Shown: piece by piece, positions 48,094-64,000 of the stretch | Position numbering within the stretch: the stretch's first letter is position 1 | How the letters are laid out: each line of letters begins with the position of its first letter | Virus record (IMG/VR): IMGVR_UViG_3300033233_000001 | Coordinates: 186,001-250,000 of that record | Reading direction: 5' to 3' (one strand) | DNA length: 64,000 nt | The notes under the pieces: generated by a model | Seen by the model: only the letters and a program-made list of their open reading frames with translations | Told to the model about the DNA's origin: nothing | Databases searched by the model: none | Position numbers and translations under genes: made by a program

Positions 48094-48103
48094 GCTCGTC
48101 CTC

Positions 48104-49384: not shown

Positions 49385-49398
49385 ATGACTTCTTCTCC

Positions 49399-50174: not shown

Positions 50175-50177
50175 GAC

Positions 50178-51005
50178 CTAGGCCTTCCTGCTCGTGCGCT
50201 TGTTACGGCGCGAGGCGCGCCTGCGCCGATTCGGAGTCGACCGCGCGCTCTTGCGCGTCGACATATACCACGCGCCGCCGCCAACTACGACAGCGCCGCC
50301 GATGCCGACGTACAGCCATGGGAACCCGCCACCGACGTTCTGGTTCGCCGTAGTCGGCGTCGACGGCGGCGGCACTAGGTCGCTCGTCGTCACCGGCGCC
50401 TCGGTCCCTGGCACCGGCGAGGTCACGAGATCGACATTCGTCTTCGTCGGCGGTGGCGGCGGCGCGTCCGGCGGTTTCGGCTGCGAGCCGAAAGTCGGCG
50501 TGTACTTCAAGAGCACCGGCGCCTGCTCCTTCGGCGGCGCCAAGAACGTCGACAGCGACTTGTACGCCGTCACGTTGATAGTGCCAGGCGCGGCGACCAG
50601 TCCACCGACAAGATCTGTCGCCAGGCTCTTGTACGTCGCGCCAGGCCAGAACGTCATCAGCGCCTCGTTCAGTCGGCGCTCGCGGTTCGCATTCGTGATC
50701 GCAAGGTCGAGCAGCGCCTTCACCGTGGAGCCCGCCACTACCGTGCCGCCCGTATACGCTCCGGAGGCCAGCCGCGTCATGTCCGTCGGCCTCATGGCAC
50801 GAAGACCGTCGCGCAGAGCCTTGAGCCCAGCCGCGTCTGCTGTCTCGTTGTTGATGGCCGCCATGCCCATGGCGCGGTCGGCCGCCTGCGCGAGCCGATC
50901 GCGATTCAACAGCGGCCAGGAGCCCTGCCCACGACCAGCTACGGGCGAAAACCCGCCGACGACAGCGAAGTCAATCGTTGCGCCAAGATCGTTCGTATAG
51001 CTCAT
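50178..51005 (-). CDS. MSYTNDLGA membrane protein
   Basis: GFPWLY TM; TPNRRRRASRRNKRTSRKA. Confidence 0.8.
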   Translation of the reverse strand: MSYTNDLGATIDFAVVGGFSPVAGRGQGSWPLLNRDRLAQAADRAMGMAAINNETADAAGLKALRDGLRAMRPTDMTRLASGAYTGGTVVAGSTVKALLDLAITNANRERRLNEALMTFWPGATYKSLATDLVGGLVAAPGTINVTAYKSLSTFLAPPKEQAPVLLKYTPTFGSQPKPPDAPPPPPTKTNVDLVTSPVPGTEAPVTTSDLVPPPSTPTTANQNVGGGFPWLYVGIGGAVVVGGGAWYMSTRKSARSTPNRRRRASRRNKRTSRKA

Positions 51006-52102
51006 CGCCGCCCTCTGCTCGTGCGCGTTCGGCGCCTGTTCGGCGTCGGCCCCGGTCGCAGCAACAGATACCCACCGACCGCAACCGCGCCGCCGACTCC
51101 GATGTACATCCACGGGACCCCAAACAGCCCCGCTCGCGGAGCCACCGGCGGCGGCACCAGTTCCTGCGGCGTCGGCGGTACGAGACTGCCTTCAGGCCGC
51201 TCGACCGTCACCTCCGGCGGCGGTGGCGTAACCGTGTTCGCAACGCACACGCCTGTCGCATCACGGTAGTAGCCGTCGTTGCACGCGATCTCCCTCGACC
51301 CCGAGCCCGTCACGTCCTGACCCTGGACCTTGCCCGCGTCGGTCCCGGCCTTCGCGGCCGCTTCGTCGGCGGCGACCTTCGCGGCAGCCGCTTCCGACGC
51401 ACTCTTCGCGTCCTCGGCCGCCTTCGCCGCCGCGGCCGCAGCAGCCGCGTCATCGGCCGACTTCGCAGCCGCAGCAGCTTCCGCGGCGATCCTCGCATCA
51501 GCCGCCGCCTTGGCCGCAGCCGCCGCTTCGGCCTCGGCCTGAGCCTGCGCCGCCGCGCTCGCCTGCTGGCGCTGAAGAGTAGCCAGGGCCGCAGCCAGAT
51601 TCGCCGCGCGCTGACGCAGCCGTTCTGCCGTCGCAGCCGCCTCTGCGGCAGCCTTCCGGCGCGCCGTCTCTGCGGCAGCAGCGGCAACAGCCGGATCGAA
51701 CTCCATGGCCGCGACTCTCGCCATCAGCTTCGGACCGCGAATCTGCCAGTTGATGTAGCCGATCCGCGCGGTGCCGCGGTACCGATCCGAGATCGCTCCC
51801 TTGATGAGATTGACCAGCGCACGCGTGTTGACCAGGCCCGCCGCGTTCACCGCGAGGACTCCGATCCAACTCGCCCCGTTGTTCAAGGCGGTCACGTCCG
51901 ACCGTGCCGTTGTGCCCTCCGTACGAGACCGAAGCGCCGCAGACCGCAGCATCGCAGCCGCCCGCATCGCACGCACGATCTCGTTGCGCTCTGCCGCCGG
52001 ATAGCCCGCACGGTAATCGACCCTGCCGGGCAGAACCGACTTGCTACTGAGTCCGGTGGGCGCGAGGTCCAGGCCGGCGCCAAGGTCGTTCGTGTAGCTC
52101 AT
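51002..52102 (-). CDS. MSYTNDLGA membrane protein with Ala-rich coiled stalk
   Basis: Long A/E/K-rich helix; GVPWMY TM. Confidence 0.8.
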   Translation of the reverse strand: MSYTNDLGAGLDLAPTGLSSKSVLPGRVDYRAGYPAAERNEIVRAMRAAAMLRSAALRSRTEGTTARSDVTALNNGASWIGVLAVNAAGLVNTRALVNLIKGAISDRYRGTARIGYINWQIRGPKLMARVAAMEFDPAVAAAAAETARRKAAAEAAATAERLRQRAANLAAALATLQRQQASAAAQAQAEAEAAAAAKAAADARIAAEAAAAAKSADDAAAAAAAAKAAEDAKSASEAAAAKVAADEAAAKAGTDAGKVQGQDVTGSGSREIACNDGYYRDATGVCVANTVTPPPPEVTVERPEGSLVPPTPQELVPPPVAPRAGLFGVPWMYIGVGGAVAVGGYLLLRPGPTPNRRRTRTSRGRR

Positions 52103-53067
52103 TCGAGACTTCCCTTCAGCGCTGTCACCAGCGCGGACATCGCGGAACTAGACACCGGAGTAAACGTCGTGGCAATCCCAGAACGGAAAACCTGCTTGTT
52201 CATCGACGACGGAAGCCCGAGAACAGGCGGCCGGATCGTCGCGGCCGCAAACGCCGCTCTCGCAGCATCGCTCGCACTCGCAATCGCCGTTCGCCGAACG
52301 ATCTGCCGTGGCGTCTCGCCAGACAGGACCGCCGCCAGCAGCTTCTCCGGAATCCGAATCTCATCACCGTTCGTGTTGGGACCGAAGTTGAAGCCGCCCG
52401 GCCAGTCACCATAGTCGAGGCGCGCCGCGCCGCTGTTCACGAGCGCTACTCCCTCGTCGTAGTAGGCCTTCAACGCCTGGGCCATCGCGCCATCGTCCTT
52501 CGTGCTCACCGGTGCCGAGGGGGACAGGTATCCACTCTGCATGAGTGCGTTTCGCAACACGTCCTTGTACAAGCTATCGGCCACGTACAGCCGCACGTAG
52601 CCATCCGGATTCACGATCCAACGAGGCACACTCGTGCTCGTCAGACGCTCGTAGAGCGGCCGAGAAATCTGGAGATCTTTGCTGGAGTTCGTGTTGGGAC
52701 CGAAGTCGGTACCCGTCGGCCACTCCGCGTCGTTCCGACCAGTCCTCACCCAGTACGAGCGCACCGCCGTGATGAACGGGCCGTCATCCCTGATCTCATA
52801 GTCGTGGCTGCCATCCCACTTCTGCACGTTGCGACGCGCCGTGAAGAGATGACTGTCAGCGTCGACGTTCCGACGATCGATCACGCCCAAGTCGGCCAGC
52901 CTCGACATCATGGCGTTCAGGACAGCCTCGTCTCCGATCTTCACGTAGTCCATGTCGCCATGCCGGAACGCGCTGGCCTGCATCGAACTCCACGAAGGCA
53001 GCGACGAGGGCGAGGGCGGCGTCTGTCCAAGACCGTTCCGCCGAACGCGAGGCATACGATAGGTCAT
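52099..53067 (-). CDS. MTY-GLG protein with two internal repeats (PG-binding-like)
   Basis: DFGPNTN/NFGPNTN; L..LG....DDG...A...Y pattern twice. Confidence 0.7.
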   Translation of the reverse strand: MTYRMPRVRRNGLGQTPPSPSSLPSWSSMQASAFRHGDMDYVKIGDEAVLNAMMSRLADLGVIDRRNVDADSHLFTARRNVQKWDGSHDYEIRDDGPFITAVRSYWVRTGRNDAEWPTGTDFGPNTNSSKDLQISRPLYERLTSTSVPRWIVNPDGYVRLYVADSLYKDVLRNALMQSGYLSPSAPVSTKDDGAMAQALKAYYDEGVALVNSGAARLDYGDWPGGFNFGPNTNGDEIRIPEKLLAAVLSGETPRQIVRRTAIASASDAARAAFAAATIRPPVLGLPSSMNKQVFRSGIATTFTPVSSSAMSALVTALKGSLE

Positions 53068-54518
53068 GACGTCCTCCTGCTCGTTCGACGAGCGCGACGA
53101 CGACGCGCGTTGGCGGTCGGAGCCGCAGCCCGCCGCTTACGCAGCGCGCGCACGGCGACCGCACCACCGACGACGATCGTCGCGCCGCCGCCCAGCCACG
53201 CGTACACGGGCACGCCGTTGAAGTCCTTCTGCCACCAAGGCAAACACGACTGCCCACGAGACTGGGCGTTCAGCGCCAGCTGCGAGTCGATCAGAGCCAT
53301 CTTCTGCACGATGGCGTCACGGTTCTGCGTGATCGCACCGGCCTTTGCTTGCGCGTCCGAGAACTGCAACGCCACCTGCTTCAACTGCGTGTCCAACGAG
53401 CGCTTGGCGTTCGAGAAGTACAGACACTTCATGTACTCCTTCGTCACCGCCATCGTGTCCTGCGCGACCGCGCCGTCTACGGCCTGAACGACCTCGTTGC
53501 GGATCGCTCTGACGATCGCGCCGCCGTCCGGGTTCGTCTCGCTCTGGACATACTGCTGAAGCCACTGCGCGCCGTCGAGCCCGCCCTGAAGCGCGGCCTT
53601 CGCGTTCGTAAGCGCAGCCGTGGTCGCATCGAGCGCCGCGACGGCCGCTGTGCACGCGTCGCCCGCAGCCGCATCGCGCGCCGCCGGGCCTGCAACCGCC
53701 GCCGCTGCGACGATCGCCTCTGTCTGTCCCGCCGCCGCCAGCGCCGCCGTCACCTTGGCCGCCGCGTCGTTGAACTGCCGCGTCGTCCGCGTGAGCGCAA
53801 TCGCCCTGTTGAGCGGGCTGCCGGAGAACGGCGCGGCAAGCGCCGCAAAGAACCCGACCGTCGCGCTCGCCGAGCGGACCGCAGCCATCTGCAACGCGTT
53901 GTCGCTCTGGTCCTGGGCGACCTTGACGATCCCGCCCTTGCCGATCGGACTCGGCAAGGTCGCCGATGCAGATCCTGCCGCCTGCACCGGCACGCCACTC
54001 GCCTTGCCGACGACGAGCAAGCCGAACGCACGAGCCGCGCTTGCCGAGACTGCGCCCGGCCAGGCAAACGCCACCCACAGCGTGCCGTGCGAGATCGCCT
54101 GATTCGTTGCAGCATCGCGCATCCAACCGGACGCCACGAAGTTGGGAGCCGAATCGACGATCCGATCGGTGATCGCCTGGCCGGTGGCCTGGATGAGTGC
54201 GTTGCCGCCGGCCCCACCACCGTAGATGCCGTCGAGCGCCGCCTGCACCTTCACGTCGTCGAGCGTCACGTACGGCCAGGCCATGACCGCGACCTGACCG
54301 GGGCCTGGGTTCTCCGTAGTTCCGAGCGTTTCGAGCCGCAGCGACTGGCAGCTGTACGGGATGATGTCCAACGTCAACTGTCGCTGTGCAGCAGCCGTTG
54401 GCGCCGCCAACTGAGGAGCAACGCGCACGTTCGTGATCACCAACGGCGCAGCCGGGCGCGTCGGGTCAGAGGATGTCCCCTGTCCCAAGCCGAAGCCGTG
54501 CTGTGCGCGGTAGCTCAT
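53064..54518 (-). CDS. MSY-GLG large membrane protein
   Basis: MSYRAQHGFGLGQ; GVPVYAW TM; TANARRRRARRTSRRTS. Confidence 0.82.
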   Translation of the reverse strand: MSYRAQHGFGLGQGTSSDPTRPAAPLVITNVRVAPQLAAPTAAAQRQLTLDIIPYSCQSLRLETLGTTENPGPGQVAVMAWPYVTLDDVKVQAALDGIYGGGAGGNALIQATGQAITDRIVDSAPNFVASGWMRDAATNQAISHGTLWVAFAWPGAVSASAARAFGLLVVGKASGVPVQAAGSASATLPSPIGKGGIVKVAQDQSDNALQMAAVRSASATVGFFAALAAPFSGSPLNRAIALTRTTRQFNDAAAKVTAALAAAGQTEAIVAAAAVAGPAARDAAAGDACTAAVAALDATTAALTNAKAALQGGLDGAQWLQQYVQSETNPDGGAIVRAIRNEVVQAVDGAVAQDTMAVTKEYMKCLYFSNAKRSLDTQLKQVALQFSDAQAKAGAITQNRDAIVQKMALIDSQLALNAQSRGQSCLPWWQKDFNGVPVYAWLGGGATIVVGGAVAVRALRKRRAAAPTANARRRRARRTSRRTS

Positions 54519-54530
54519 CTTCGTCGATCC

Positions 54531-54971
54531 TCAGTATCCAGGCCACCCGTATACGTACGACGGACACCAGGTTCCCATGCAGCGCTGCCAGTCGCTCGGG
54601 TCCAGGAATCCATCGCAGCGCCACTGCTCGCTGCACACCGGATAGTTACCACCGTAGTAGTAGCCGTCGCCGTAGTAGCCCGGCCAGCCCCAACCCCAGC
54701 CGCCGCCCCAACCGCGCCCGCGCCAACGACCACCGTGCCCATGGCCGTGTCCGCCGTGGCCATGACGAGGCGCCCCGCCGCCCATGAACCCGGCGCCGCC
54801 GCCGCGAGGCCCGAGGCCGCCGCCGCCAGGCAGATTCCGAGGCGCACCTGGCATACCGCCGCCGGGACCGCGCATGGGCATTCCGCCACCCATCCGACCA
54901 GCGCCGCCGCCCCGGCCACCGCCACCGCCGCCACCCTTGCCGAGACCGTATAGAGGCTGCCTGTAGCTCAT
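54531..54971 (-). CDS. MSY-GLG Gly-rich, Cys/Trp/Tyr-rich protein
   Basis: MSYRQPLYGLGK; poly-Gly. Confidence 0.65.
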   Translation of the reverse strand: MSYRQPLYGLGKGGGGGGGRGGGAGRMGGGMPMRGPGGGMPGAPRNLPGGGGLGPRGGGAGFMGGGAPRHGHGGHGHGHGGRWRGRGWGGGWGWGWPGYYGDGYYYGGNYPVCSEQWRCDGFLDPSDWQRCMGTWCPSYVYGWPGY

Positions 54972-55090
54972 GACTGATCTCCGTACTTACGTTCCCACGC
55001 CCTGGCCTCAGGGCTGTTTTCGTACCTGACCGCGGCGACAAACCAGAGCGCGAATGCGCCGACCGCCATCCACTTGAGTCGCTCAGACAT
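54968..55090 (-). CDS. 40-aa single-TM peptide
   Basis: Coupled at both ends. Confidence 0.5.
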   Translation of the reverse strand: MSERLKWMAVGAFALWFVAAVRYENSPEARAWERKYGDQS

Positions 55091-55431
55091 CAGCGCCTCC
55101 GCTTGTTTCGACGCGCCCTGCGACGACCACGATTGGCCGTGGGCGACGCCGCGCGCGCCTTCATGCGCGTATAGAAGAACCACAGCGACCATGCACTCAA
55201 CCCGAGACTCACGAACGCGACGTACTCCATGCGCCGCGCGCGCGCACGGTCTTCATCGATGAACGCGTCCTGCCCGAGATGGTCGTTCATCAGCCGCGGC
55301 GGATGCGTCTGAAACACCATGGGAGAGACCTGGCCACGAAGCCGCTGGGGCTGGCCGTAGTCGGCGAAGACCCATGGGTTCGTAACGCCCCACCTCTGGA
55401 AGCCGAGCGACCTGTCGACCTTGTAGCTCAT
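55090..55431 (-). CDS. MSY membrane protein with basic tail
   Basis: MSYK..SLGF..HLGQ; TM; TANRGRRRARRNKRRR. Confidence 0.78.
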   Translation of the reverse strand: MSYKVDRSLGFQRWGVTNPWVFADYGQPQRLRGQVSPMVFQTHPPRLMNDHLGQDAFIDEDRARARRMEYVAFVSLGLSAWSLWFFYTRMKARAASPTANRGRRRARRNKRRR

Positions 55432-55892
55432 CGAGATCTCCCGCTGGTCCGCTTCTTCGGCCGGCGGCTGCCGCGCTTCTTGCTGCCGCGCTTCTTGTTC
55501 GCACGAAGCGGCGAGCCGTGGATCTCGCCGTCGTCGACGTACAGGTCGAACATCCCAAACTTCTTCGCCGCTTTCGAGAGGCGCTTCTGGTTCTCTTCGG
55601 ACAGATCGTCCTCGTCCCAAAAACCAGTGCCATGACCGTTCCTGTTCAACCAGAAACGGTTGCCCGCGCGATCGTCGTCGATGCCGGCCTGATCGTCTGT
55701 CGCGCTCCAGAAGTACTCGTTGCCACCGAAGAACTCCTCGCAGTCTCGCTTCATCGCTGCGAGCGTCTCTGCTGCGATGTCAGCGGGTCCGTAGTGCTTG
55801 TCGAGCGGTTCGCCGCCAGACTCGTCGCTCTCGTCGTTCGTCGACCAGAGCGCCGCTTCGATGTACGCATCCGTGAACTTCTTGAGGCTCAT
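55428..55892 (-). CDS. Small phage-type domain plus C-terminal tag
   Basis: F.DAYIEAALWS...FWLNRNGHGTGFWD; RANKKRGS..KKRTSGRSR. Confidence 0.85.
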   Translation of the reverse strand: MSLKKFTDAYIEAALWSTNDESDESGGEPLDKHYGPADIAAETLAAMKRDCEEFFGGNEYFWSATDDQAGIDDDRAGNRFWLNRNGHGTGFWDEDDLSEENQKRLSKAAKKFGMFDLYVDDGEIHGSPLRANKKRGSKKRGSRRPKKRTSGRSR

Positions 55893-56572
55893 CGTGCCCT
55901 CCCGCTGGTCCGCTTCTTCGGTCGACGGGAACCACGCTTGTTCTTCCGGAACCCGTACACGCCGAGTTCCTTCGCGAGCACCACCATTTCTGCGTCCGTG
56001 AAGCCCTCGGGATGGAACGAACGGCGACGCTCTTCGCCGCGCTCGAAGTACCCCCGGTCCTGTACGACATCCGTCTCGGTGAACCAGCGCGGCACACCAG
56101 CAGAGGAGTCGGCTTCGAGTGAGCCGCCAGACTCGTACCTGAGCTTCTTTGCGGCAGCCTCAACCCAGCCGATGCCGTCGTCCTCGTCGAGGTCGTCCGG
56201 CGTGATGAGCATCGAGTCGTCCCAGCCGCGCTCAGCGACATCGCCCTCTTCTGCGCTCTCGGGCGTCACGATGTCGTAGGTCACGTTGATCACGCGGCAC
56301 TCGTCGCCGCCGGGACGCGTGACGGTCCACTCGGCCGCCGCGCCGCCGCCGCCCGTGTAGCTCTGGCCGGGCTTGAGTGCCTTGAGCGCCTTGACCTCGT
56401 CATCGCCGAGGCCCTCGCCGTTCACGCGCAGGAACTCATGCAGCGACGTCGGAGCCTCGCCTTGAGCCTCAGTGTCGCCGTAATCGGCAGGCGAATGGTA
56501 GGTGATCTCTCCATCGATCAAGATCGTGAAGTGGTCACCGGTCCTGCCGTTGCGCTTCGGGCGCCTAGTCAT
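55889..56572 (-). CDS. Two acidic domains, tagged at both ends
   Basis: MTRRPKRNG; VTYDIVTPESAEEGD; RKNKRGSRRPKKRTSGRAR. Confidence 0.82.
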   Translation of the reverse strand: MTRRPKRNGRTGDHFTILIDGEITYHSPADYGDTEAQGEAPTSLHEFLRVNGEGLGDDEVKALKALKPGQSYTGGGGAAAEWTVTRPGGDECRVINVTYDIVTPESAEEGDVAERGWDDSMLITPDDLDEDDGIGWVEAAAKKLRYESGGSLEADSSAGVPRWFTETDVVQDRGYFERGEERRRSFHPEGFTDAEMVVLAKELGVYGFRKNKRGSRRPKKRTSGRAR

Positions 56573-57009
56573 CGACGCCTCCGGCTCGTGCGCTTCTTCG
56601 GGCGACTCGTGCGCCTGCGACGCGGAACCGGGTTCCGACGCGAACGGCGGCTCCTGCGCTTCCCGCGATTCGCCGCCGTTCCATGCTGGATCCGGTACTC
56701 CGCCGCCCATTCCTCGGCCATGTCTTTCGCGACCTGCTTGCGCGTGGCCGGCGTGAACATCGAGTTCCACCGATCAGGCGTCCCCTCCTCACGTGCCCAC
56801 TTCTTGGCGCCCGCGTCGACGAGGTACTTGAAAGCCGCAGGCGCGCGCGCCGCGTCGAAGACGCCGCGCTTCATCTTCTTTTCGAGACCTTTGTGAACGT
56901 ACGTCGTCGTCGATCGATACAAGTCGCCATCGTTGTCGATGTAGAGCTTGAGATCATCCGCGCTGTACACGCGGTTACAACGAGAAGTACGCGTTGTTCG
57001 ACGGACCAT
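56569..57009 (-). CDS. Small phage-type domain tagged at both ends
   Basis: LKLYIDNDGDLYR..F.YLVDAGAKK; AANRGK..KKRTSRRRR. Confidence 0.82.
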   Translation of the reverse strand: MVRRTTRTSRCNRVYSADDLKLYIDNDGDLYRSTTTYVHKGLEKKMKRGVFDAARAPAAFKYLVDAGAKKWAREEGTPDRWNSMFTPATRKQVAKDMAEEWAAEYRIQHGTAANRGKRRSRRSRRNPVPRRRRTSRPKKRTSRRRR

Positions 57010-57011
57010 CG

Positions 57012-57353
57012 TCAGTCCTCGCTCTTCGTCTTGAACTTGAAGTGCTTGTTCTTCTCGAACTTCTTCTTCTTCGATCGCGCCTGCCGCGGCCGCCACCATC
57101 CGAAGTAGAACCACAGCGCGCCGATCGCAGTCGCGCCCGTTCCGAACCAGAAGTAGTTGGCCCGATAAAACGGCACAGCCTCCGGCGCGGGCGGAACCTG
57201 CCCGATGCCGTACAGCGGATATGGTGCCATCCCGGCCGCCTGCCGAGCGCCGCCGCTCGCACGGCGCGCCTGCGACGCGTACGAGAGCGGCGCGTCGCTC
57301 TCGTCACCGCCGATGACGTAGTCCTGTGCTGTCATGGTGCGTGCTGCGGGCAT
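57012..57353 (-). CDS. GIG membrane protein
   Basis: LYGIGQ; TM; KKKFEKN. Confidence 0.7.
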   Translation of the reverse strand: MPAARTMTAQDYVIGGDESDAPLSYASQARRASGGARQAAGMAPYPLYGIGQVPPAPEAVPFYRANYFWFGTGATAIGALWFYFGWWRPRQARSKKKKFEKNKHFKFKTKSED

Positions 57354-57356
57354 GGG

Positions 57357-58856
57357 TTAGTTCCTCTTTCCTCGACTGCGCTTCGAGCGCCGACTGTTCC
57401 GCTTCATCTTGCGCATCATGCGCCGCCAGCTGCCCTTGACGTTCTCAGTCACCTTCTGACCAGCTTCCGTCTGGGTCGCCGCGAGGTAGCCGACGCCGAG
57501 CACCGCAGCGCCGATGACGATGTTGCGCGGCGTCAGAAAGCCCGTCGGCGTCTGCCCAGCGGGCACAATCGCCGTCCCGTCCGGCGAAGTCTGCGCGACC
57601 TCGCCCATGCCGGCAGCGGCAGGAGAGTGGTAGAACGCTCCGAGGTCCGTCTGGAGCTTCTGCTGGTCGGCCACGAGCGGCGAAAGGTGGTCGCTTGCCG
57701 CCTTCTTCAACGCCGGCTGATTGGCTCGCACGGCCATCGCCATGCGGTCGAGACGCGGCAGACCGCCGCCGGCCTTCGCGCGGTCGGCAAGGTCGCGCAT
57801 CGTCGCGTGCATCACGCAGTGCGCGAGCGTGTCTTCGAGCGCCGCATCCGGCCGGTAGCCCATCTGGATCAGACGGTCCGCCACGAGCTTCGCCTTCTTC
57901 GACATCTGCGGCCCAAGAGCCTCGGTCGCAGTCGACAGGAACCGCGACCGCGTGTTCGGGTCGTGCATCATCTTGGCCTCCGCCAAGAGACACTGCGCAG
58001 CGCGCCGCCCGAATGCCTCGATGTGCGACTGCGGGCCAGTGCGATCCTTCGCCATCTTGGGCATCGCTCGACTCTGCCGACTCGGACCCTGCGCGTTGCC
58101 GTTCATGTACGGACTGAACGCAGCGGGCGGCGGATTCAGAGACGGCACGCGCTTGCTGAGGGGAACGCCAGAGGCGTTCACCTGCGTGACGGTCCAGTTG
58201 TCGGCAGTCGAGTCCCACATGGCAGACTGCTGAATCCCGTCCGCGTCCTCTTCTGCGATGTACGCTGGCTCTGCGAACTTGTTCGCGAAGATACCGTCGC
58301 GCACACGAAAGGTCACGCCCTCCGGCATGTCGAAAATGCCGGCGCCGATGACGTTCTGCTCGCTCGTGTCGTACTCGTAGGACGACCGGTCGTATTCCGT
58401 CAGCGGATCGACATCCTCCTGGGACGGCATCTCGTTCTGCTGCGTCGGCCGGAAGCGTGAAATCCGAGCCTCACCGTCGGGACTGACTGCGATGCTGCGC
58501 GGTGCGAGCGCGGTACCTGGACCTGCATCGCCAAGGTCCGACATATCCGTGTGCTGCTGCGAGAACGGACGGTAGCCCGTGTCGCTAGCGGTTTCCCACG
58601 GGTTCGCGCCGTAGGTCGTCTGGTTGATGCCAGGGCCATTGTCGACATCGTCCATCATCGTGAACGACTTCGTGCCCTCGATGTCTGTCGCGGGCGCAGG
58701 GCCGCCGCCCTTCTTCGGCACGGTCTCCTGAAGGTCATCGGTCAGGAAGTCGTCGTCCATCGACGAGCCCTGGTAGTCCTGCACGTCGAGATTGGCGTTG
58801 CCGCGCATCGTCGGCAGTTCCATCTCGTCATCGTTGAACAGATCGTCGTCGCTCAT
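57357..58856 (-). CDS. 499-aa membrane protein with acidic N-half
   Basis: AAGMGE; TM; KRNSRRSKRSRGKRN. Confidence 0.8.
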   Translation of the reverse strand: MSDDDLFNDDEMELPTMRGNANLDVQDYQGSSMDDDFLTDDLQETVPKKGGGPAPATDIEGTKSFTMMDDVDNGPGINQTTYGANPWETASDTGYRPFSQQHTDMSDLGDAGPGTALAPRSIAVSPDGEARISRFRPTQQNEMPSQEDVDPLTEYDRSSYEYDTSEQNVIGAGIFDMPEGVTFRVRDGIFANKFAEPAYIAEEDADGIQQSAMWDSTADNWTVTQVNASGVPLSKRVPSLNPPPAAFSPYMNGNAQGPSRQSRAMPKMAKDRTGPQSHIEAFGRRAAQCLLAEAKMMHDPNTRSRFLSTATEALGPQMSKKAKLVADRLIQMGYRPDAALEDTLAHCVMHATMRDLADRAKAGGGLPRLDRMAMAVRANQPALKKAASDHLSPLVADQQKLQTDLGAFYHSPAAAGMGEVAQTSPDGTAIVPAGQTPTGFLTPRNIVIGAAVLGVGYLAATQTEAGQKVTENVKGSWRRMMRKMKRNSRRSKRSRGKRN

Positions 58857-58902
58857 GTCCGTGTTTCCCGTCTTGTTTTTAGGCGCCCAGCCCGGTTTAT
58901 GA

Positions 58903-59634
58903 TCAGGAGAGAATCAGCCAGAGAATCGCGGTGACACCAAGGACGCCGCCGCCGACCATGAACATCTTCCTTCGCGTGACCTGTGCGTGCCCGGCAGCAA
59001 GCTGTGCAGCCTCAAGCTGTCGCTGAGCGGTCGCTGCCTGTGACGCCGCGAGTCTAGCCTGCGCTTCGCGCTGCTCGCGCGTGCAGTCCATCGCGCCGCT
59101 TGCGATACCGCTGCCGACGTCGGTGACACCTTTGACGATGGTGCCCCAGAATGGAACGATACTCGCGATGCCGCCGACGGTGTTCGCGCCGCCTGCAATA
59201 GAACAGCCGATGGCACGGTCGCCAGGAGCGAGATCGCCCAGGCCGGCGGTGCCGAGGGGCGTGTCGACCAGCACATCCCAGCCGAGGCGGTTGCCGACGC
59301 TGTTTCGGATCTGCCCGACGACTCGCTCGCGGACGCGGTCAGCGAGCGTCGAGCGGATCGCGTCGAACAGCGCCTGGTCCTGGCCGCGGTTCCGCGTGTT
59401 CTTCCGCAGCCGCCGCGCGACTTCCGGGCCGAGGCCCGGCTGAAGCGCATCGAGCTTCTGGCGCAGCACCAGAGACCGCGAGGCCGGCTGCGCCTTCGCC
59501 ATGGCGAGCAAAACGCCACTCGCGTCGAGCGAAGCGCGCGCGAGGATCGGATCTGCGGACGCGGCTTGCCCGACGGTGAGTCCGCCCGAAGCCACTTCGC
59601 CGAAACCGAGACCTCTCCGCGCACGATACGACAC
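58903..59634 (-). CDS. VSY-GLG membrane protein, paralog of 60028
   Basis: ADPIL..ASL.AS.VLL.MA; C-terminal TM. Confidence 0.78.
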   Translation of the reverse strand: MSYRARRGLGFGEVASGGLTVGQAASADPILARASLDASGVLLAMAKAQPASRSLVLRQKLDALQPGLGPEVARRLRKNTRNRGQDQALFDAIRSTLADRVRERVVGQIRNSVGNRLGWDVLVDTPLGTAGLGDLAPGDRAIGCSIAGGANTVGGIASIVPFWGTIVKGVTDVGSGIASGAMDCTREQREAQARLAASQAATAQRQLEAAQLAAGHAQVTRRKMFMVGGGVLGVTAILWLILS

Positions 59635-59644
59635 ACGAGCCTTT

Positions 59645-60019
59645 CTACCATTCACGAACGTAGTTGCCGATCCCGCGCATGGATACGCGCATCAGCGGGC
59701 GTACAGCGGGCTTTGTCATCAAGATGGAACGCGCGGCCGCCTGTGCCCGCTGCGCTTGCCTTGCCGTAAGCCAGGACGTATCGCCACCGACGCGCGTTCT
59801 GCGCGCTGCCTGCTCTCGATAGGATGCCGTGCGCGCTGCTTCGTAGCGGGCCCGCCTGGACTGCCTTTCCCGCTCCGCCTGATTTCGCTGGGATGCCGTA
59901 CGCGCCGCTTCGTAACGGGCGCGGGTGGCCTGTCTTTCTCGATCTAGCTGCGCCGCTTCGCGCGCTAGTTCTTCCGGCGAAACCCTCACCTTCAATCCAA
60001 CCTGTCCAAGTCCGAACAT
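59645..60019 (-). CDS. GLG/GIGNYV coiled protein
   Basis: MFGLGQ; ARYEAARTAS x2; ends GIGNYVREW. Confidence 0.7.
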   Translation of the reverse strand: MFGLGQVGLKVRVSPEELAREAAQLDRERQATRARYEAARTASQRNQAERERQSRRARYEAARTASYREQAARRTRVGGDTSWLTARQAQRAQAAARSILMTKPAVRPLMRVSMRGIGNYVREW

Positions 60020-60027
60020 CCTACGCC

Positions 60028-60711
60028 TCACTTCTTCAACACCGCGAACAACACGGTCGCGATCACTAGACCGCCGCCGCCGATGAGAAGGTAGCGCATC
60101 ATACGCGCCTCCTGAGCCTGCTGCATCTGAAGCTGCTGCATCTGAACGCTCTGCGCGAGTTGCGCCTGCGCCTGCGCCTGCCGAGTCTGAGCATCGATGC
60201 CAGCGATGTTGCAACCGCCGATCGTGCCACCCGTTGCCGAGGCCGACTGGACTGCGCCGATCTGTCCGGTCTGACCGCCGGCTCCGAACGCATCGAGGAA
60301 GCCCCCGACAATCGACGTGCCTCCCGCCACCGTACAGAAGCCGACACGGACGTCACTATCGGTGCTGCCGAGGCCCTGCGTCCCCTGCTGACCCATCTGC
60401 GCCTTCGTCAACGCGACGAGCCGATTCGCGATGGCCGCGCGCACGACGTCGAAAATGACTTGGTCAGCCTGATCAGCGGACTTCGTCGCGGCGAGACGCA
60501 GGAAGTCGGCGCGCGTCTTCGTCCCAAGACCTGGCGTCGCGGCGTTCAGCGTGTCCGTCATCACCCGAAGCCGCTTGCTGCGCGGGACGGCCGCCATCTT
60601 GAGCAGCACGTTCGACGCCGCGAGGCTGGCCGACGAGAGGATCGGGTCCGTCTTTGCCTGTTGGCCGGCCTGGATGGGCGCAGAGCCTGTGATCGTGAGT
60701 CCGAGAGCCAT
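60028..60711 (-). CDS. GLG membrane protein, paralog of 58903
   Basis: KTDPILSSASLAASNVLLKMA; QGLGS; C-terminal TM. Confidence 0.8.
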   Translation of the reverse strand: MALGLTITGSAPIQAGQQAKTDPILSSASLAASNVLLKMAAVPRSKRLRVMTDTLNAATPGLGTKTRADFLRLAATKSADQADQVIFDVVRAAIANRLVALTKAQMGQQGTQGLGSTDSDVRVGFCTVAGGTSIVGGFLDAFGAGGQTGQIGAVQSASATGGTIGGCNIAGIDAQTRQAQAQAQLAQSVQMQQLQMQQAQEARMMRYLLIGGGGLVIATVLFAVLKK

Positions 60712-60714
60712 GGA

Positions 60715-61155
60715 TCACTTCCTTCTGCGACGCCGACGAACGTTCGGGCTGACCGAGGCCGGCGCGGCCGCTCTGGCCGGAGCGGGCCTCATGGCCACCG
60801 TGATGAGCGCGACCGCAACGGCAGCGCCGCCGATGCCGATGTACGTCAGCGTGTTGTCCGGTGCGGGCACCATCGGCATGACCGGAGCCCAACTCGTCGA
60901 CGGCGAAGCCGACACGAAGTGCGAGAGGTCGGTCTTCGCCGGTTCCGGACGATAACCCGACGGCTTCGTCCCGCCCGAGGGCGCCGGTGTCGTCGTAGAC
61001 GTCGACGCCCCGGTCGTACTCGACGGCATCCCGATTGACATCGCCGTCAAAGACGACTCCTGTCCGAGCGAGCCCGTGCCGTGGTACTGCGGCACGCGAC
61101 CACGCACTCGGAAGGCCGCGAGACGGTCGAAGATCGGCGAGATCGCGTAGCTCAC
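60715..61155 (-). CDS. VSY-LGQ membrane protein
   Basis: GSLGQ; TM; SPNVRRRRRRK. Confidence 0.75.
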   Translation of the reverse strand: MSYAISPIFDRLAAFRVRGRVPQYHGTGSLGQESSLTAMSIGMPSSTTGASTSTTTPAPSGGTKPSGYRPEPAKTDLSHFVSASPSTSWAPVMPMVPAPDNTLTYIGIGGAAVAVALITVAMRPAPARAAAPASVSPNVRRRRRRK

Positions 61156-61499
61156 CGCGAACGCCTCCGGCGACGGCGGCTGTTGCGCTGCGTGTGCCGA
61201 ACTCCGAAGCCCTGGGCAAGGCTGATCGGAATCGCCAGCGGCCAGAAGGCGCCGCCGATGATGCCCCATACGAGGGCCCACCCGATCGAGTTGTTCCGGC
61301 GGTAGCCGTGGTACGCGAGGGCGCCGACAGATGCAGTGCCCGCGACGAGCATGAGCGTGCGCACGGGCTGCGAAAGGGTCATCGCCGTGCTCGTCTGACC
61401 GGTTACGACCGGAGACGGAGCAGGCGGAATCGTCTGCTGACCGAGTCCAGCCGCCGCGAAGAGTCCGCCGCCAGCGCCGTAATAGCCCATGCCGTTCAT
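61152..61499 (-). CDS. GMG/GLG membrane protein, paralog of 38287
   Basis: AYHGYRRNNSIGWALVWG..GG.FWP; QRNSRRRRRRSR. Confidence 0.8.
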   Translation of the reverse strand: MNGMGYYGAGGGLFAAAGLGQQTIPPAPSPVVTGQTSTAMTLSQPVRTLMLVAGTASVGALAYHGYRRNNSIGWALVWGIIGGAFWPLAIPISLAQGFGVRHTQRNSRRRRRRSR

Positions 61500-61509
61500 T
61501 GTCGTCTCC

Positions 61510-61980
61510 TTACCAGCCACGCACGTAGTTGCCGATGCCTGAAGTGGCTGGCAACGCCCTGTCCGCCGAACCTCGCTGCGTCGTCGACGAGGCCTGTGCG
61601 GCCGCCGCGATCTGCTGCGCCGCAGCCGCCGCCTGCGCGTTCGCAACCGCTGCTGCCTGCGGAGAGCGAGCGCGAAGTTCGAGCACCGCGAGCCAGCCCT
61701 GCGCGTCCCCGTGCACCGACGGACCGACGAGCGCGAGCCAGTCCGCGAGCGCGGCCGGCGACACGCTCTGCCCGACGACGACGACGTCCGCGCGGTTGAC
61801 CATCTCGGCAAAGTCCGGCTGCCATGCCGATCGCGGCTGCGAAAGCATCGAGGCGGCCTGCTGCTTGGCAGAGTCGTACCGCTGACGTCGCGCTTCGGTC
61901 GAAACCGCCATCCCAGGCGGGACCTGGCCGTCCGGTCGTCGACCAGTGAAAACGCTGAGGATTCTGTCGATGAAGTTCAC
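61510..61980 (-). CDS. GIGNYV protein
   Basis: Ends SGIGNYVRGW. Confidence 0.7.
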   Translation of the reverse strand: MNFIDRILSVFTGRRPDGQVPPGMAVSTEARRQRYDSAKQQAASMLSQPRSAWQPDFAEMVNRADVVVVGQSVSPAALADWLALVGPSVHGDAQGWLAVLELRARSPQAAAVANAQAAAAAQQIAAAAQASSTTQRGSADRALPATSGIGNYVRGW

Positions 61981-61995: not shown

Positions 61996-62571
61996 TTACG
62001 CCGCCGACTGGACCGGGAACATCGAGTGCTGCTTCACGCGCCCAAGCATCGACGCCGTACGTCGGCCCGCGACCGGATCGAGAACCCACCAGGTCTTCGT
62101 GCGCGGGTCCTGCGCCGTACAGAAGACGTGCGTGTGGATCTTCTGCTCGCCAGGCCATCGAGGCTGAAAGCCGACGGTCACGAAGCGAACCGGCGCACCG
62201 ATACAGAGGCATCCGGTGCCGATTGCCACAGCGAGGTCGTCGCAGTCCATCGCCGCCCGACCAGAGAGCGCATCGTCGAGCAGACGCTCAGGGTCCCGGA
62301 TCAATTCCTGGTGCAACGGGTCTCGCGTATAGCGACCCGCGTTGCCCCACCATCGGCAGATGGCGATGATCTCGGACGTGTAGTCCTTCGGACGAATGTT
62401 CGCGATGATCTGTTCCGTGTGCCGCCGGACCTTGAACGATTGTTCGCCGCGCGGACCGAGCGCGACCTCGATCATCTTCGCGACGGTGTGATCGGTGCCT
62501 CGGTACGGCTCAACCGTACCGACCGCCGTGTTGTAGGCAGAATTGTAGGCGCTTGCGCGGAGCGACGGCAT
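61996..62571 (-). CDS. Transglutaminase-fold Cys hydrolase (candidate maturation protease)
   Basis: DCDD, HTHVF and VLDP give a Cys-His-Asp triad; first gene of the long minus-strand run. Confidence 0.85.
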   Translation of the reverse strand: MPSLRASAYNSAYNTAVGTVEPYRGTDHTVAKMIEVALGPRGEQSFKVRRHTEQIIANIRPKDYTSEIIAICRWWGNAGRYTRDPLHQELIRDPERLLDDALSGRAAMDCDDLAVAIGTGCLCIGAPVRFVTVGFQPRWPGEQKIHTHVFCTAQDPRTKTWWVLDPVAGRRTASMLGRVKQHSMFPVQSAA

Positions 62572-62714: not shown

Positions 62715-62948
62715 ATGAACACCACCATCAGGAAGATCGGGAACAGCGACGGCGTCATCATTCCGGCGGCCGTCATGGCGCGCCTGGGCATGGAGACAGG
62801 CGATCCGGTTACTCTCGACGTCGAGGGTAGCCGACTCGTGATCTCGTCGAGGTCCGGCGCGGCCTCTGACAGCGGCGACTTCGAGCGCGCGGCCGTTGCC
62901 GTGACGAGGCGCTACGCGTCGCTTCTTCGTAAGCTGGCCGACTTGTGA
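62715..62948 (+). CDS. AbrB/MazE-family antitoxin
   Basis: IRKIGNSDGVIIP....LG...GD.V. Confidence 0.88.
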   Translation: MNTTIRKIGNSDGVIIPAAVMARLGMETGDPVTLDVEGSRLVISSRSGAASDSGDFERAAVAVTRRYASLLRKLADL

Positions 62949-63418
62949 GCCACTTCCGCTACCTCAGCGTCGACGAGGTTCTGGCTCTTCACGAGATAGC
63001 AATTCAGAATGGCGGCGGTGGCCCACTTGAAGTCCGAGACCCAGGCGGAGTCGAAGCTGCCGTTTTTCAACCGCAAGCCGGCTTCGGAGACATTCTATTC
63101 TACAAGACCGTCCCCGAGATTGCCGCTGCTTACGCGTATTTCATCGCACAACGGCAGGCTTTCGTCGAGGGCAACAAAAGGACCGGATGGCTTGCGGCCT
63201 GCACCTTCGTCGAGATGAACGGCGGCCTAGTCGAAGCCACGGACGACGACGCCATCCAGATGCTACTGGAGGTCTCAAAAGGCCTGTCGCTGGAAAGCGT
63301 GGCGGACTGGTTTGCCGAGCGCATCGTCCAACTGGTACACGAAAATCTCCCGAAACGGAACAGCAGACCAAAGCGCACGAGTCGCAGGTCGAAGCGCGCT
63401 AGCAGGCCGAAGCGCTAG
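62945..63418 (+). CDS. doc: Doc/Fic-family toxin with C-terminal basic tag; motif His replaced by Gln
   Basis: RQAFVEGNKRTG; VRD.GG.EAAV.QP; ends KRNSRPKRTSRRSKRASRPKR. Confidence 0.85.
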   Translation: MSHFRYLSVDEVLALHEIAIQNGGGGPLEVRDPGGVEAAVFQPQAGFGDILFYKTVPEIAAAYAYFIAQRQAFVEGNKRTGWLAACTFVEMNGGLVEATDDDAIQMLLEVSKGLSLESVADWFAERIVQLVHENLPKRNSRPKRTSRRSKRASRPKR

Positions 63419-63744
63419 CGCCGCGTCGTCAGCTTCACCCCGTCGCGCATGACGACCTTCGGCAACGGTCGCTCGACGACCGCCGGCCTCGATCCGGTGC
63501 GTTCAATGCGCACGTCGACGACGTTCCGCCCCTGGAAGACCGTCACCATGACGAACGGGTCACCGGGCACGATGCCGAGCGTCCGGAACGGCGCGAGCGG
63601 AAACGCGTGCAGCTGTCCGTCGAGCCAGCGCACCGACACGCGATCGCCCCGCGCTGACAGCACCATGCCGGTGCGACGCTCCTGCGTCAGCTTCTGCTGC
63701 TGCGGTTGCGGCAGTCGCCGATAGTTACCGATGCCGACCTTCAC
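63415..63744 (-). CDS. Hypothetical protein
   Basis: ORF convergent with doc. Confidence 0.6.
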   Translation of the reverse strand: MKVGIGNYRRLPQPQQQKLTQERRTGMVLSARGDRVSVRWLDGQLHAFPLAPFRTLGIVPGDPFVMVTVFQGRNVVDVRIERTGSRPAVVERPLPKVVMRDGVKLTTRR

Positions 63745-63755: not shown

Positions 63756-63995
63756 TTACTCGTCCCCGCCGCCGCCCGCTACAGCCTCACGCAACAGCGC
63801 CATGGAATCCCTGATCAGGCGATGCCCGGCAGGCGTCGCACCCGCAGACCGCGGCTCGACCGCCTTGATGCCGTCGATGATTTCCTGGTCGCTCTTGGCG
63901 CAGATGCCTTCGAGAATCGCGGTCGGGAAGCCGCCTTCCATGACCTTCTCGACGAACTCCTCAGCCGTGTCGGCCTGGTTCACGGAGTCGTGCAC
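63756..63995 (-). CDS. Hypothetical protein (start near the window edge)
   Basis: Native-looking ORF. Confidence 0.5.
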   Translation of the reverse strand: MHDSVNQADTAEEFVEKVMEGGFPTAILEGICAKSDQEIIDGIKAVEPRSAGATPAGHRLIRDSMALLREAVAGGGGDE

Positions 63996-64000
63996 GAGCT

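What the first reader, a model, noticed from the sequence alone, without database searches (positions are those of the whole stretch)
61996..62571. Transglutaminase-fold Cys enzyme leading the morphogenesis operon: candidate tag-processing enzyme
Seen: intact DCDD / HTHVF / LDP triad, in the first gene of about 40 kb of co-oriented tagged genes; the only clear Cys hydrolase in the window. Established: this fold includes both proteases and cross-linking enzymes. Inference: it cleaves at GLG or Asn sites, or cross-links via the Gln after GLG.
Basis: inference. Interest (0 to 1): 0.65.

Follow-up and report, generated by a model that had tools for sequence, protein, structure and literature searches.

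The report
Viral transglutaminase-fold cysteine enzyme
This gene in an uncultured 298-kb virus encodes a small, very conserved, probably active cysteine enzyme of the transglutaminase fold, related to a virion protein of a membrane-containing phage; it always lies beside genes for membrane-anchored proteins with short end motifs, which suggests but does not show that it trims them.

Summary
The gene is real: window 61996-62571 (-), 191 aa. The DCDD, HTHVF and LDP motifs are present. C110, H148 and D165 are invariant or nearly so in about 270 relatives. An AlphaFold model (pLDDT 95.5) has a transglutaminase/papain-like core, with Z 10-12.6 to solved structures of that fold. The only cultured-virus relative of known role is gp34 of Salisaeta icosahedral phage 1, a virion structural protein (hhalign 99.5%).

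It is not the conserved first gene. In 10 related loci four to five co-oriented genes precede it. In this genome a MazE/Doc toxin-antitoxin pair has been inserted just upstream.

It is by far the best conserved gene of its block: 70% identity against 27-42% for its neighbours. At least 15 relatives carry an intein exactly at the catalytic Cys.

The tags are real. The G-hydrophobic-G-(Q/N) motif occurs 25 times against 7.7 expected. Tagged, C-terminally anchored proteins follow the gene in every relative examined, and the G-hydrophobic-G core is fused to the enzyme domain in longer family members.

Best reading, confidence about 0.4: a virion-associated thiol peptidase of the LapG type that makes limited cuts in these proteins. 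Cross-linking is less likely. No cleavage has been shown.

The parts
61996..62571 (-). Gene for the 191-aa single-domain transglutaminase-fold Cys-His-Asp enzyme (P0001), stop codon included
   Evidence: Translation. More than 150 homologues at 57-83% identity. AF2 model pLDDT 95.5. Fold matches.
62242..62244 (-). Codon of the catalytic Cys110, flanked by D109 and D111 (the D-C-D motif)
   Evidence: Sequence. Cys in 278/281 rows. It lies at the N-terminus of helix 110-123. It is the intein insertion point in at least 15 relatives.
62128..62130 (-). Codon of His148, the invariant His of HTHVF
   Evidence: It is the first residue of strand 148-154.
62077..62079 (-). Codon of Asp165 (LDP)
   Evidence: It follows strand 161-164.
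62715..62948 (+). MazE/AbrB-type antitoxin gene, part of an inserted toxin-antitoxin cassette. The start is taken at MNTTIRK; the longest ORF starts at 62553.
   Evidence: PF04014 31.2 bits. Absent from all 10 related loci.
62945..63418 (+). Fic/Doc toxin gene whose product ends in a 21-aa polybasic KRTSRR-type tail
   Evidence: PF02661 50.7 bits. Tail seen in the translation.
63415..63744 (-). Conserved upstream neighbour, 109 aa, with N-terminal MKVGIGNY
   Evidence: Orthologues in 8 loci share an N-proximal G-(I/L)-G-(N/G/S)-Y.
63756..64000 (-). C-terminal end of the conserved 865-aa protein, which runs beyond the window. It lies upstream of the enzyme gene in all relatives.
   Evidence: 33% identical to the 795-aa protein of L001 and 28% to the 861-aa protein of L003. 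No family hit.
61510..61980 (-). Downstream 156-aa gene whose product ends in ...SGIGNYVRGW
61152..61520 (-). 122-aa protein with AGLGQQ at residues 24-29, a C-terminal hydrophobic segment and a QRNSRRRRRRSR tail. It is the conserved +1 gene of relatives.
38376..61155 (-). Run of co-oriented genes, most with N-proximal G-hydrophobic-G(Q/N), C-terminal G/A-rich hydrophobic segments and/or polybasic tails bounded by Asn/Pro
   Evidence: Collinear with L001 at 27-42% identity.

Best explanation
The gene encodes an active single-domain cysteine enzyme of the transglutaminase/papain-like fold. It is a core gene of a lineage of uncultured, high-GC jumbo viruses (contigs of 70-298 kb). It is homologous to gp34, a virion structural protein of the internal-membrane phage SSIP-1.

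The gene sits inside a conserved, co-oriented block. That block is probably late or structural. The gene lies directly upstream of a run of small proteins that carry a terminal G-hydrophobic-G(Q/N) motif, a C-terminal hydrophobic anchor and often a polybasic tail.

The most likely mechanism has four steps:
1. Cys110, activated by His148 and Asp165, attacks a peptide bond.
2. The acidic residues flanking and facing the nucleophile (D109, D111, D84, E89) form a LapG-like cation site that gates activity.
3. The enzyme makes limited cuts at small-residue motifs in the co-encoded tagged proteins, and in cis in the longer fused relatives. In this it acts as a maturation or processing peptidase of a virion (membrane) protein module, much as LapG cuts [T/A/P]AAG and as phage T4 gp21 removes capsid-targeting peptides.
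4. The processed proteins take their mature form in the virion.

Shown: the gene, the fold, the invariant residues, homology to a virion protein, synteny with tagged proteins, and the motif fused to the domain. Inferred: catalysis, calcium dependence, virion location in this lineage, and the identity of the substrates.
For: - **Fold.** The AF2 model has pLDDT 95.5. VIA Z is 10-12.6 to 3kd4, TG3, factor XIII and 3isr, and about 9 to PNGase and LapG. ESM Atlas neighbours are viral Transglut_core clusters with TM 0.70-0.78.
- **Family.** 1913 relatives at E<=1e-3. 48 of 66 aligned members hit PF01841, best E 1.3e-16.
- **Invariant residues.** D84, E89, D109, C110, D111, H148 and D165.
- **Inteins.** At least 15 representatives have an intein inserted exactly between D109 and C110.
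- **Peptidase leaning.** The best profile hit in the PDB is P. fluorescens LapG (E 9.7e-4). It aligns RY.RDP..vE..P and gDCDD with LapG's RYVEDI..VDYWETP and GDCEDYA. In the LapG family, the Asp and Glu flanking the Cys are the calcium site needed for activity, and the enzymes cut between two small residues (PMC13090378; PMC4359373).
- **Virion link.** hhalign against SSIP-1 gp34, annotated 'structural protein', gives 99.5% probability and E 1.4e-22.
- **Link to the tags.** The same gene order and tagged neighbours occur in 10 loci. All six IMG/VR contigs found through the tagged 499-aa protein that have enough upstream flank also hold the enzyme. G[LIM]G occurs 38 times against 13.3 +/- 3.6 in the extensions of 44 longer family members, and 0 times inside the domain.
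- **Constraint.** 70% identity against 27-42% for every neighbour.
- **No other protease.** No canonical prohead protease family was found in the genome.
Against: - No cleavage product, mature N-terminus or virion proteome exists for this lineage.
- The Q/N after G-x-G is not invariant. In the upstream neighbour the motif starts at residue 3-4, so a cut there would remove only a few residues.
- The complex prediction of the enzyme with that neighbour gave no answer.
- A calcium-gated enzyme would be poorly active in the cytoplasm, and P0001 has no signal peptide or membrane anchor of its own.
- P0001 itself scores below the Pfam threshold (16.8 against 23 bits). Only 2 of 66 members touch Peptidase_C93.
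- The structural nature of the block is inferred by elimination, and the block also holds a gene similar to one annotated RecT-like in phage Tunturi_5.
- The absence of canonical proteases means little in a genome where terminase and capsid are also undetectable.
- The synteny evidence comes from related genomes and so is not independent.
Confidence: 0.4

Rival explanations
1. It is a virion-associated cell-wall peptidase or isopeptidase. On this reading the enzyme cuts peptide stems or cross-links of the host wall during genome delivery or lysis, as the transglutaminase-fold Pei enzymes of archaeal phages cut pseudomurein. The neighbouring tagged proteins are then just fellow virion or membrane proteins.
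For: SSIP-1 gp34 is a structural protein with a C-terminal anchor, and a lysozyme-like ORF lies nearby. Fold matches include PeiP 8z4f and phage psiM2 PeiP. 2 of 66 members touch Peptidase_C71. P0248 and a neighbour of P0131 show weak PG_binding_1 hits. A LapG-like calcium site would suit an extracytoplasmic site of action.
Against: Phage lysins are usually variable and modular, whereas this protein is the most conserved of its block and is a bare catalytic domain without a wall-binding domain. The G-hydrophobic-G enrichment in cis is not explained. The PG_binding hits are below threshold.
Confidence: 0.2
2. It is a true transglutaminase or a deamidase acting on the amide side chain after G-x-G. 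On this reading the thioester is formed with the Gln (or Asn) that follows the motif. The acyl group then passes to a Lys, cross-linking virion proteins, or to water, giving deamidation.
For: The fold is shared with factor XIII and TG2/TG3 at Z about 10. The residue after G-x-G is most often Q or N and lies in terminal, probably flexible, segments.
Against: The nucleophile sits in M-D-C-D-D, not the G-Q-C-W motif of cross-linking transglutaminases. The flanking beta-sandwich and barrel domains are absent. Classical transglutaminases do not use Asn. Q/N is replaced by G, S or A in orthologues and in fused relatives. The best sequence matches are a protease (LapG) and an amidase (PNGase).
Confidence: 0.12
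3. It is a host-directed or counter-defence peptidase unrelated to the tags. On this reading the enzyme, packaged or expressed, cleaves a host protein, such as a defence factor, an envelope protein or a ubiquitin-like conjugate. Its place beside the tagged genes is only a matter of shared expression timing.
For: Papain-like and transglutaminase-like enzymes are common effectors. Strong conservation would fit a conserved host target. No interaction with a neighbour was predicted, though that result carries no weight.
Against: The fixed position in a conserved block across very distant relatives (37-40% identity), homology to a structural protein and fusion to anchors and motifs of the same kind as its neighbours all tie it to the module.
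Confidence: 0.12
4. It is a non-catalytic structural protein that merely keeps the fold, as Rad4/XPC and protein 4.2 do.
For: The fold matches include inactive members such as Rad4 and protein 4.2. gp34 is annotated only as structural.
Against: Cys, His and Asp, plus four acidic residues around the site, are invariant over about 270 relatives down to about 27% identity. Inteins use the Cys as their +1 residue, but its conservation extends to all members without an intein.
Confidence: 0.03

Closest known systems
[quoted passage not shown]
   Same: It is homologous over 138 columns (hhalign 99.5%, E 1.4e-22). It shares the RY.PDP..VE..P, DCD, H.V and LDP motifs. Both genes are followed by small proteins with C-terminal G/A-rich hydrophobic segments and short basic tails.
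   Different: gp34 is 304 aa with its own C-terminal anchor, while P0001 is a bare 191-aa domain. SSIP-1 is a 44-kb tailless virus with an internal membrane, whereas this genome is 298 kb and of unknown morphology. No biochemical function is known for gp34.
LapG / DvhG (BTLCP, MEROPS C93): calcium-dependent periplasmic cysteine proteases
   Same: It is the best PDB match by sequence profile. It has the same Cys-His-Asp triad and acidic residues on both sides of the Cys (D-C-E in LapG and DvhG, D-C-D here). These enzymes make a single limited cut at a motif of small residues ([T/A/P]AAG), releasing a terminal module.
   Different: There is no Pfam C93 match for P0001, no signal peptide, and no LapD-type regulator. 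The context is viral, and the candidate motif is G-hydrophobic-G rather than A-A. Calcium binding is untested.
Phage prohead/maturation proteases with targeting peptides (T4 gp21 and its capsid-targeting sequences; phiKZ-type proteases)
   Same: The logic is analogous. One conserved protease gene lies in the structural block, and many virion proteins carry short terminal peptides. This comparison rests on my own knowledge and was not tested here.
   Different: Those enzymes are serine proteases of the herpesvirus-assemblin/S77/S78 type. No such family is detectable here, and the fold here is papain-like.
Cross-linking transglutaminases (factor XIII, TG2, TG3)
   Same: The core fold matches at Z about 10 with 150 aligned residues, and the triad is the same.
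   Different: P0001 has no flanking domains and lacks the GQCW motif. It is about a quarter of their size, and no sequence-level match to them appears in the PDB search.
Pei pseudomurein endoisopeptidases (C71) of archaeal phages
   Same: They are phage-encoded enzymes of the transglutaminase fold. There are weak fold and Pfam matches.
   Different: The matches are weak (Foldseek E about 1e-2). Pei enzymes carry wall-binding repeats and act in lysis of methanogens.

Membership tests
Transglutaminase-like superfamily (Pfam PF01841 Transglut_core, papain-like clan) | Match to the family HMM above the curated threshold | tested here: inconclusive
   P0001 itself scores 16.8 bits against a cut-off of 23 (E 0.008), covering profile positions 11-108 of 108. 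However, 48 of 66 aligned family members match (best E 1.3e-16), and relatives P0248 and P0128 score 53.2 and 36.8 bits.
Transglutaminase-like superfamily (Pfam PF01841 Transglut_core, papain-like clan) | Alpha/beta core with the Cys at the N-terminus of a helix, and the His and Asp on or just after adjacent strands | tested here: met
   AF2 model pLDDT 95.5: helix 110-123, strands 148-154 and 161-164. Z 10-12.6 to transglutaminase-fold structures. TM 0.70-0.78 to viral Transglut_core clusters.
Transglutaminase-like superfamily (Pfam PF01841 Transglut_core, papain-like clan) | Conserved Cys-His-Asp triad | tested here: met
   C110 278/281, H148 263/263 and D165 262/262 among non-gap rows. Catalysis itself is not testable here.
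BTLCP / LapG family (Peptidase C93, PF06035) | Match to the PF06035 HMM | tested here: not met
   No hit for P0001. Only 2 of 66 family members hit, best E 2.7e-4. LapG is nevertheless the best PDB profile hit, E 9.7e-4.
BTLCP / LapG family (Peptidase C93, PF06035) | Acidic residues flanking the catalytic Cys that form the active-site calcium site | tested here: inconclusive
   D109-C110-D111 is present and conserved (D109 266/281; D111 is D or E in 267/271), and it aligns with GDCED of LapG. Metal binding cannot be tested with these tools.
BTLCP / LapG family (Peptidase C93, PF06035) | Secreted or periplasmic enzyme (signal peptide or N-terminal anchor) paired with a LapD-type regulator and a large adhesin | tested here: not met
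   The N-terminus MPSLRASAYNSAYNTAVGT has no hydrophobic segment. The neighbours are viral genes with no Lap homologues.
Protein cross-linking transglutaminases (factor XIII / TG2 type) | Multi-domain architecture (beta-sandwich, core, two barrels) and a GQCW active-site motif | tested here: not met
   Single 191-aa domain with motif MDCDD. Only the core aligns, model residues 24-191 against chain residues about 170-470.
Canonical phage prohead proteases (S78, S77, ClpP-like) | Match to PF04586, PF03420 or PF00574 | tested here: not met
   No match anywhere in the genome. P0001 is of another fold, so any resemblance is functional only.
SSIP-1 gp34-like viral transglutaminase-fold proteins (unnamed family) | Profile-level homology across the catalytic domain, with shared motifs | tested here: met
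   hhalign 99.5%, E 1.4e-22, 138 columns. tblastn of P0001 against SSIP-1 gives E 7.9e-8.

The most novel reading that the evidence does not exclude
This virus and its relatives (contigs of 70-298 kb) may carry an enlarged version of the SSIP-1-type virion-membrane module. That module would be some twenty C-terminally anchored proteins with polybasic tails, possibly contacting the DNA. The transglutaminase-fold enzyme would be their dedicated maturation peptidase, trimming G-hydrophobic-G(Q/N) end tags. It would take the place of the serine prohead protease of ordinary tailed phages, and could be switched on by calcium outside the cytoplasm.
Probability: 0.15. Interest if true: 0.8.

Novelty: new member of a known kind. 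Interest (0 to 1): 0.55.

Why it matters
Transglutaminase-fold cysteine enzymes are widespread in uncultured viruses. This profile finds 1913 relatives, and the nearest ESM Atlas clusters are almost wholly viral. None has a known reaction.

This family is the most constrained gene of a conserved, otherwise unrecognisable block in a lineage of very large viruses. It is hit repeatedly by inteins at its nucleophile, and it is homologous to a structural protein of a membrane-containing phage.

If it is the processing enzyme for the terminal motifs on its neighbours, it would be a new kind of virion maturation protease, and a handle for annotating a large dark structural module. The tags themselves might then serve as portable targeting or processing signals. 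A toxin gene newly inserted here already carries one.

If it is only a lysin or a structural relic, the finding is ordinary.

Tried and rejected
- **Single-sequence AlphaFold.** It failed (pLDDT 36). The alignment-based run replaced it.
- **PDB sequence hits to designed Kelch 'SAKe' proteins**. These are artefacts of six repeated weak matches to a short HTH..DP..W string and were rejected.
- **PHROGs.** It gave nothing useful for P0001 or ten distant relatives.
- **tblastn of P0001 against cultured phages.** No match. Only more distant family members reached SSIP-1 and a Geoglobus pleomorphic virus.
- **Complex prediction of the enzyme with the upstream 109-aa protein.** No answer, ipSAE 0.00. 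This counts neither for nor against binding.
- **Attempts to name the block as morphogenetic.** Pfam and PHROGs scans of 30 window and flanking proteins, and of 20 large proteins elsewhere, found no capsid, portal, terminase, tail or packaging ATPase. Whole-genome searches for Terminase_6N/6C, HK97 capsid, Pox_A32 and FtsK also found none.
- **Further searches on the neighbours.** An Atlas search on the 865-aa protein, PDB searches on the 865-aa neighbour, and tblastn of it and three other window proteins against cultured phages were uninformative.
- **Word-based homologue search for the 109-aa neighbour.** It found only two proteins.
- **The alignment A2.** It was too diverse for locus finding, so A1 was used instead.
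- **Papers not held.** The SSIP-1 paper (Aalto 2012) and the LapG structure paper (Chatterjee 2012) could not be read. The mature N-termini of SSIP-1 structural proteins therefore could not be checked.
- **One wasted search.** A paper search with min_terms=1 returned nothing relevant.
- **Promoter and terminator scan of 61400-64000.** Nothing above chance.
- **Atlas search on the C-terminal part of P0248.** No usable hit.

Full report
**What is there.** The minus-strand ORF at 61996-62571 translates to 191 residues plus a stop. The longest ORF (a TTG start at 62697) would overlap the divergent neighbour. The ATG at 62571 gives an N-terminus, M-x-LRA..Y...YN, that aligns with those of 25 homologues.

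The three motifs are present. DCDD is residues 109-112. HTHVF is residues 146-150. LDP is residues 164-166. The conserved His is H148; position 146 varies (H, Y, F). The window is part of a single 297,749-bp IMG/VR virus record. That record is linear, with CheckV completeness 90%, about 65% G+C, and window coordinates 186001-250000.

**Family and fold.** Pfam gives only a sub-threshold Transglut_core match for the protein itself (16.8 against 23 bits). PHROGs gives nothing useful.

The word-based search found more than 150 homologues of 57-83% identity. Almost all are 185-215 aa and come from metagenomes, on contigs of up to 166 kb. A profile search of 1.8 billion cluster representatives found 1913 relatives at E<=1e-3 and 310 at E<=1e-10. 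Distant relatives pass the Pfam threshold (53.2 and 36.8 bits). Of 66 aligned members, 48 hit Transglut_core, with a best E of 1.3e-16.

A single-sequence fold failed. With the 66-sequence alignment, AlphaFold gave pLDDT 95.5 and pTM 0.90. In that model Cys110 opens helix 110-123, His148 opens strand 148-154, and Asp165 follows strand 161-164, which is the papain/transglutaminase arrangement.

Fold searches agree:
- Foldseek finds 3isr, Rad4, TglA, LapG, PNGase, TgpA and PeiP.
- VIA-align gives Z 12.6 to 3kd4 and Z 10-11 to TG3, factor XIII, TG2 and 3isr. It gives Z of about 9 to PNGase and LapG.
- The nearest ESM Atlas clusters are viral Transglut_core proteins, at TM 0.70-0.78 and rmsd 1.2-2.6.

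PDB sequence hits to designed 'SAKe' propellers are repeat artefacts.

**Signs of an active and essential enzyme.** Over 284 domain rows from about 270 relatives, D84, E89, H148 and D165 have no substitutions. C110 is kept in 278 of 281 rows. D109 and D111 are nearly invariant.

At least 15 of about 150 cluster representatives carry an insertion of 139-340 residues exactly between D109 and C110. The insertion begins C-(F/L)-P-E-G-T-L and ends (S/H)-(N/Q) before CDD. Its start matches the Hint module weakly. These are inteins that use the catalytic Cys as their +1 residue. By established knowledge, inteins settle in conserved sites of proteins that the element cannot lose.

**Context.** The order is the same in the syntenic contig L001, in seven IMG/VR loci, and in two distant relatives (L003 at 40% enzyme identity, L006 at 37%):
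1. a gene of about 170 aa;
2. a gene of about 200 aa (DUF7547 in this genome);
3. a gene of 670-865 aa;
4. one to five small genes, of which the one nearest the enzyme begins MKG(I/L)GNY in the closer relatives;
5. the enzyme gene;
6. the tagged genes.

The strand switch lies about 4 kb upstream of the enzyme gene. In this genome the same upstream genes exist, at 63415-63744, 63756 onward, and up to genome position 253625. A MazE-type antitoxin gene and a Fic/Doc gene on the plus strand (62715-63418; PF04014 and PF02661) sit between them and the enzyme gene. None of the ten relatives has this pair, so it is an insertion.

Against L001 the enzyme is 70% identical, while every collinear neighbour is 27-42% identical. 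It is therefore the most constrained gene of the block.

Whether the block is 'morphogenetic' is unproven. No capsid, portal, terminase, tail, packaging-ATPase or prohead-protease family was found in the window or the genome. The recognisable genes lie elsewhere: helicases, RtcB, NAMPT, a PurZ-like enzyme and TnpB-like transposases. The dark co-oriented block is thus the best candidate for the structural genes, but only by elimination. It also contains a phrog_2319 gene similar to the gene annotated 'RecT-like' in phage Tunturi_5.

**The tags.** They are real.
- G[LIMFV]G[QN] occurs 25 times in my 435 gene calls against 7.7 +/- 2.6 in shuffles. Sixteen of the 25 lie near a terminus, although such positions make up 35% of all residues, and most are in this window.
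- Thirty-three proteins end in polybasic tails. Fourteen start with polybasic heads, often bounded by Asn/Pro (..RRNP.. at the N-terminus..PNRRR.. at the C-terminus).
- Many tails follow a G/A-rich hydrophobic segment.
- Some tag-coding DNA is repeated at 86-97% nucleotide identity.

The relatives keep the G-x-G motif and the C-terminal anchors. The long Arg tails fade in the most distant ones.

**Link between the enzyme and the tags.** There are three lines of evidence, none of them direct.

1. Co-occurrence. Every locus with the enzyme has tagged, anchored neighbours. Every IMG/VR contig found through the tagged 499-aa protein that has enough upstream sequence has the enzyme, which is six of six. 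These genomes are related, so this is one observation repeated.
2. Fusion. Forty-four family members have at least 60 residues outside the catalytic domain. In those extensions G[LIM]G occurs 38 times against 13.3 +/- 3.6 in shuffles, and never inside the domain. Several of these proteins also end in a hydrophobic anchor with a short basic tail.
3. A cultured relative. The only matches in 50,697 phage records are gp34 of Salisaeta icosahedral phage 1 and one ORF of a Geoglobus pleomorphic virus. gp34 is annotated as a structural protein. It aligns with the family at 99.5% probability and has a C-terminal anchor. Small proteins with C-terminal G/A-rich anchors follow it. SSIP-1 is a tailless icosahedral phage with an internal membrane (PMC6356626).

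**Which chemistry.** The best sequence-profile match among solved structures is LapG of P. fluorescens (E 9.7e-4), followed by PNGase. The alignment pairs the family's RY.RDP..vE..P and gDCDD with LapG's RYVEDI..VDYWETP and GDCEDYA.

In the LapG family, activity needs the triad and an adjacent calcium site. That site includes the Asp and Glu on either side of the Cys (D316/E318 around C317 in DvhG). The cut falls between two small residues in [T/A/P]AAG (PMC13090378; PMC4359373). Here D109, D111, D84 and E89 are invariant.

Cross-linking transglutaminases have a different active-site motif and extra domains, which are absent here. I therefore favour a limited-proteolysis peptidase over a cross-linker. 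A wall isopeptidase of the Pei type, a deamidase and a host-directed protease remain open.

A calcium-gated enzyme without an export signal is awkward for cytoplasmic processing. It would fit activation in the particle or in the periplasm, but this is speculation. A complex prediction with the upstream neighbour gave no answer and counts for nothing.

**Verdict.**
- The enzyme is a new, uncharacterised member of a known superfamily.
- Its steady partnership with a module of end-tagged, anchored proteins is the part worth an experiment.

Noticed in passing
window 62715-63418 (+): A MazE/AbrB antitoxin and Fic/Doc toxin pair is inserted between conserved genes. It is absent from all 10 related loci. 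The Doc protein ends in a 21-aa tail, KRNSRPKRTSRRSKRASRPKR, like the virus's own tagged proteins, as if a newly acquired gene had been given the tag.
   Followed up: partly
family relatives P0121-P0123, P0129, P0133, P0147, P0163, P0172, P0177, P0178, P0191, P0192, P0203 and others: Inteins, both mini and full-length, are inserted exactly between the Asp and the catalytic Cys (..D|C(F/L)PEGTL ... (S/H)(N/Q)|CDD) in at least 15 of about 150 cluster representatives.
   Followed up: partly
window 199-1859 (-): A cluster of 11 tRNA genes: Ile, Arg, His, Ala, Asp, Phe, Trp, Gln, Lys x2 and Tyr.
   Followed up: no
window 41182-41217, 45622-45657, 46233-46268; and 38287, 40216, 51002, 56569: The DNA coding for N-terminal MTKRTSKKPKR heads (86-97% identical) and for C-terminal basic tails (63-80%) is repeated between otherwise different genes. 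This suggests duplication or gene conversion of tag cassettes.
   Followed up: no
window 35837-38290 (-): An 817-aa protein whose N-terminal half matches phrog_2319 (E 4.5e-52). It is similar to a gene annotated 'RecT-like ssDNA annealing protein' in the 309-kb Tunturiibacter phage Tunturi_5 and to genes of Vibrio and Aeromonas jumbo phages. It sits in the middle of the supposed morphogenesis block.
   Followed up: partly
window 28617-29675 (-) and 30554-31159 (-): Two ORFs with LAGLIDADG-like motifs (GAVFGDGY, LAGIVDGEGCF) lie between unrelated-looking ORFs. They are possibly homing endonucleases in introns of a highly expressed gene. Rfam found no group I intron at gathering score. The motifs were seen by eye only.
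   Followed up: no
window 31496-32104 (-) and 32134-34356 (-); also 41227-42891 and 48890-49489: The C-terminal motif GRGYAGGL(F/Y)ARNLFAG is shared by the first two adjacent proteins. Related D/NLFAG or NLFD strings occur near the N-termini of the other two.
   Followed up: no
genome outside the window: 117581-118942 (+), 46791-48215 (+), 113858-116569 (+), 174275-175999 (-), 10354-11649 (-), 48671-50299 (+): A PurZ-like gene (phrog_1211, E 2e-83) hints at a modified adenine in the DNA. There are also genes for NAMPT, RtcB and a Ro-like RNA-binding protein, and two strong TnpB/IS605-type transposase-like genes (a third, at 170288-171946, matches only weakly). No recognisable capsid, portal, terminase or tail gene occurs anywhere in 298 kb.
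   Followed up: no
L016 (SSIP-1, JN880423.1 record positions 21296-26866) compared with window 38376-62571: The gene neighbourhood of SSIP-1 gp34 has the same look as this block: small proteins with C-terminal G/A-rich anchors and short basic tails, and a Walker-A structural protein, gp40. This raises the possibility that these jumbo viruses carry a virion membrane.
   Followed up: partly
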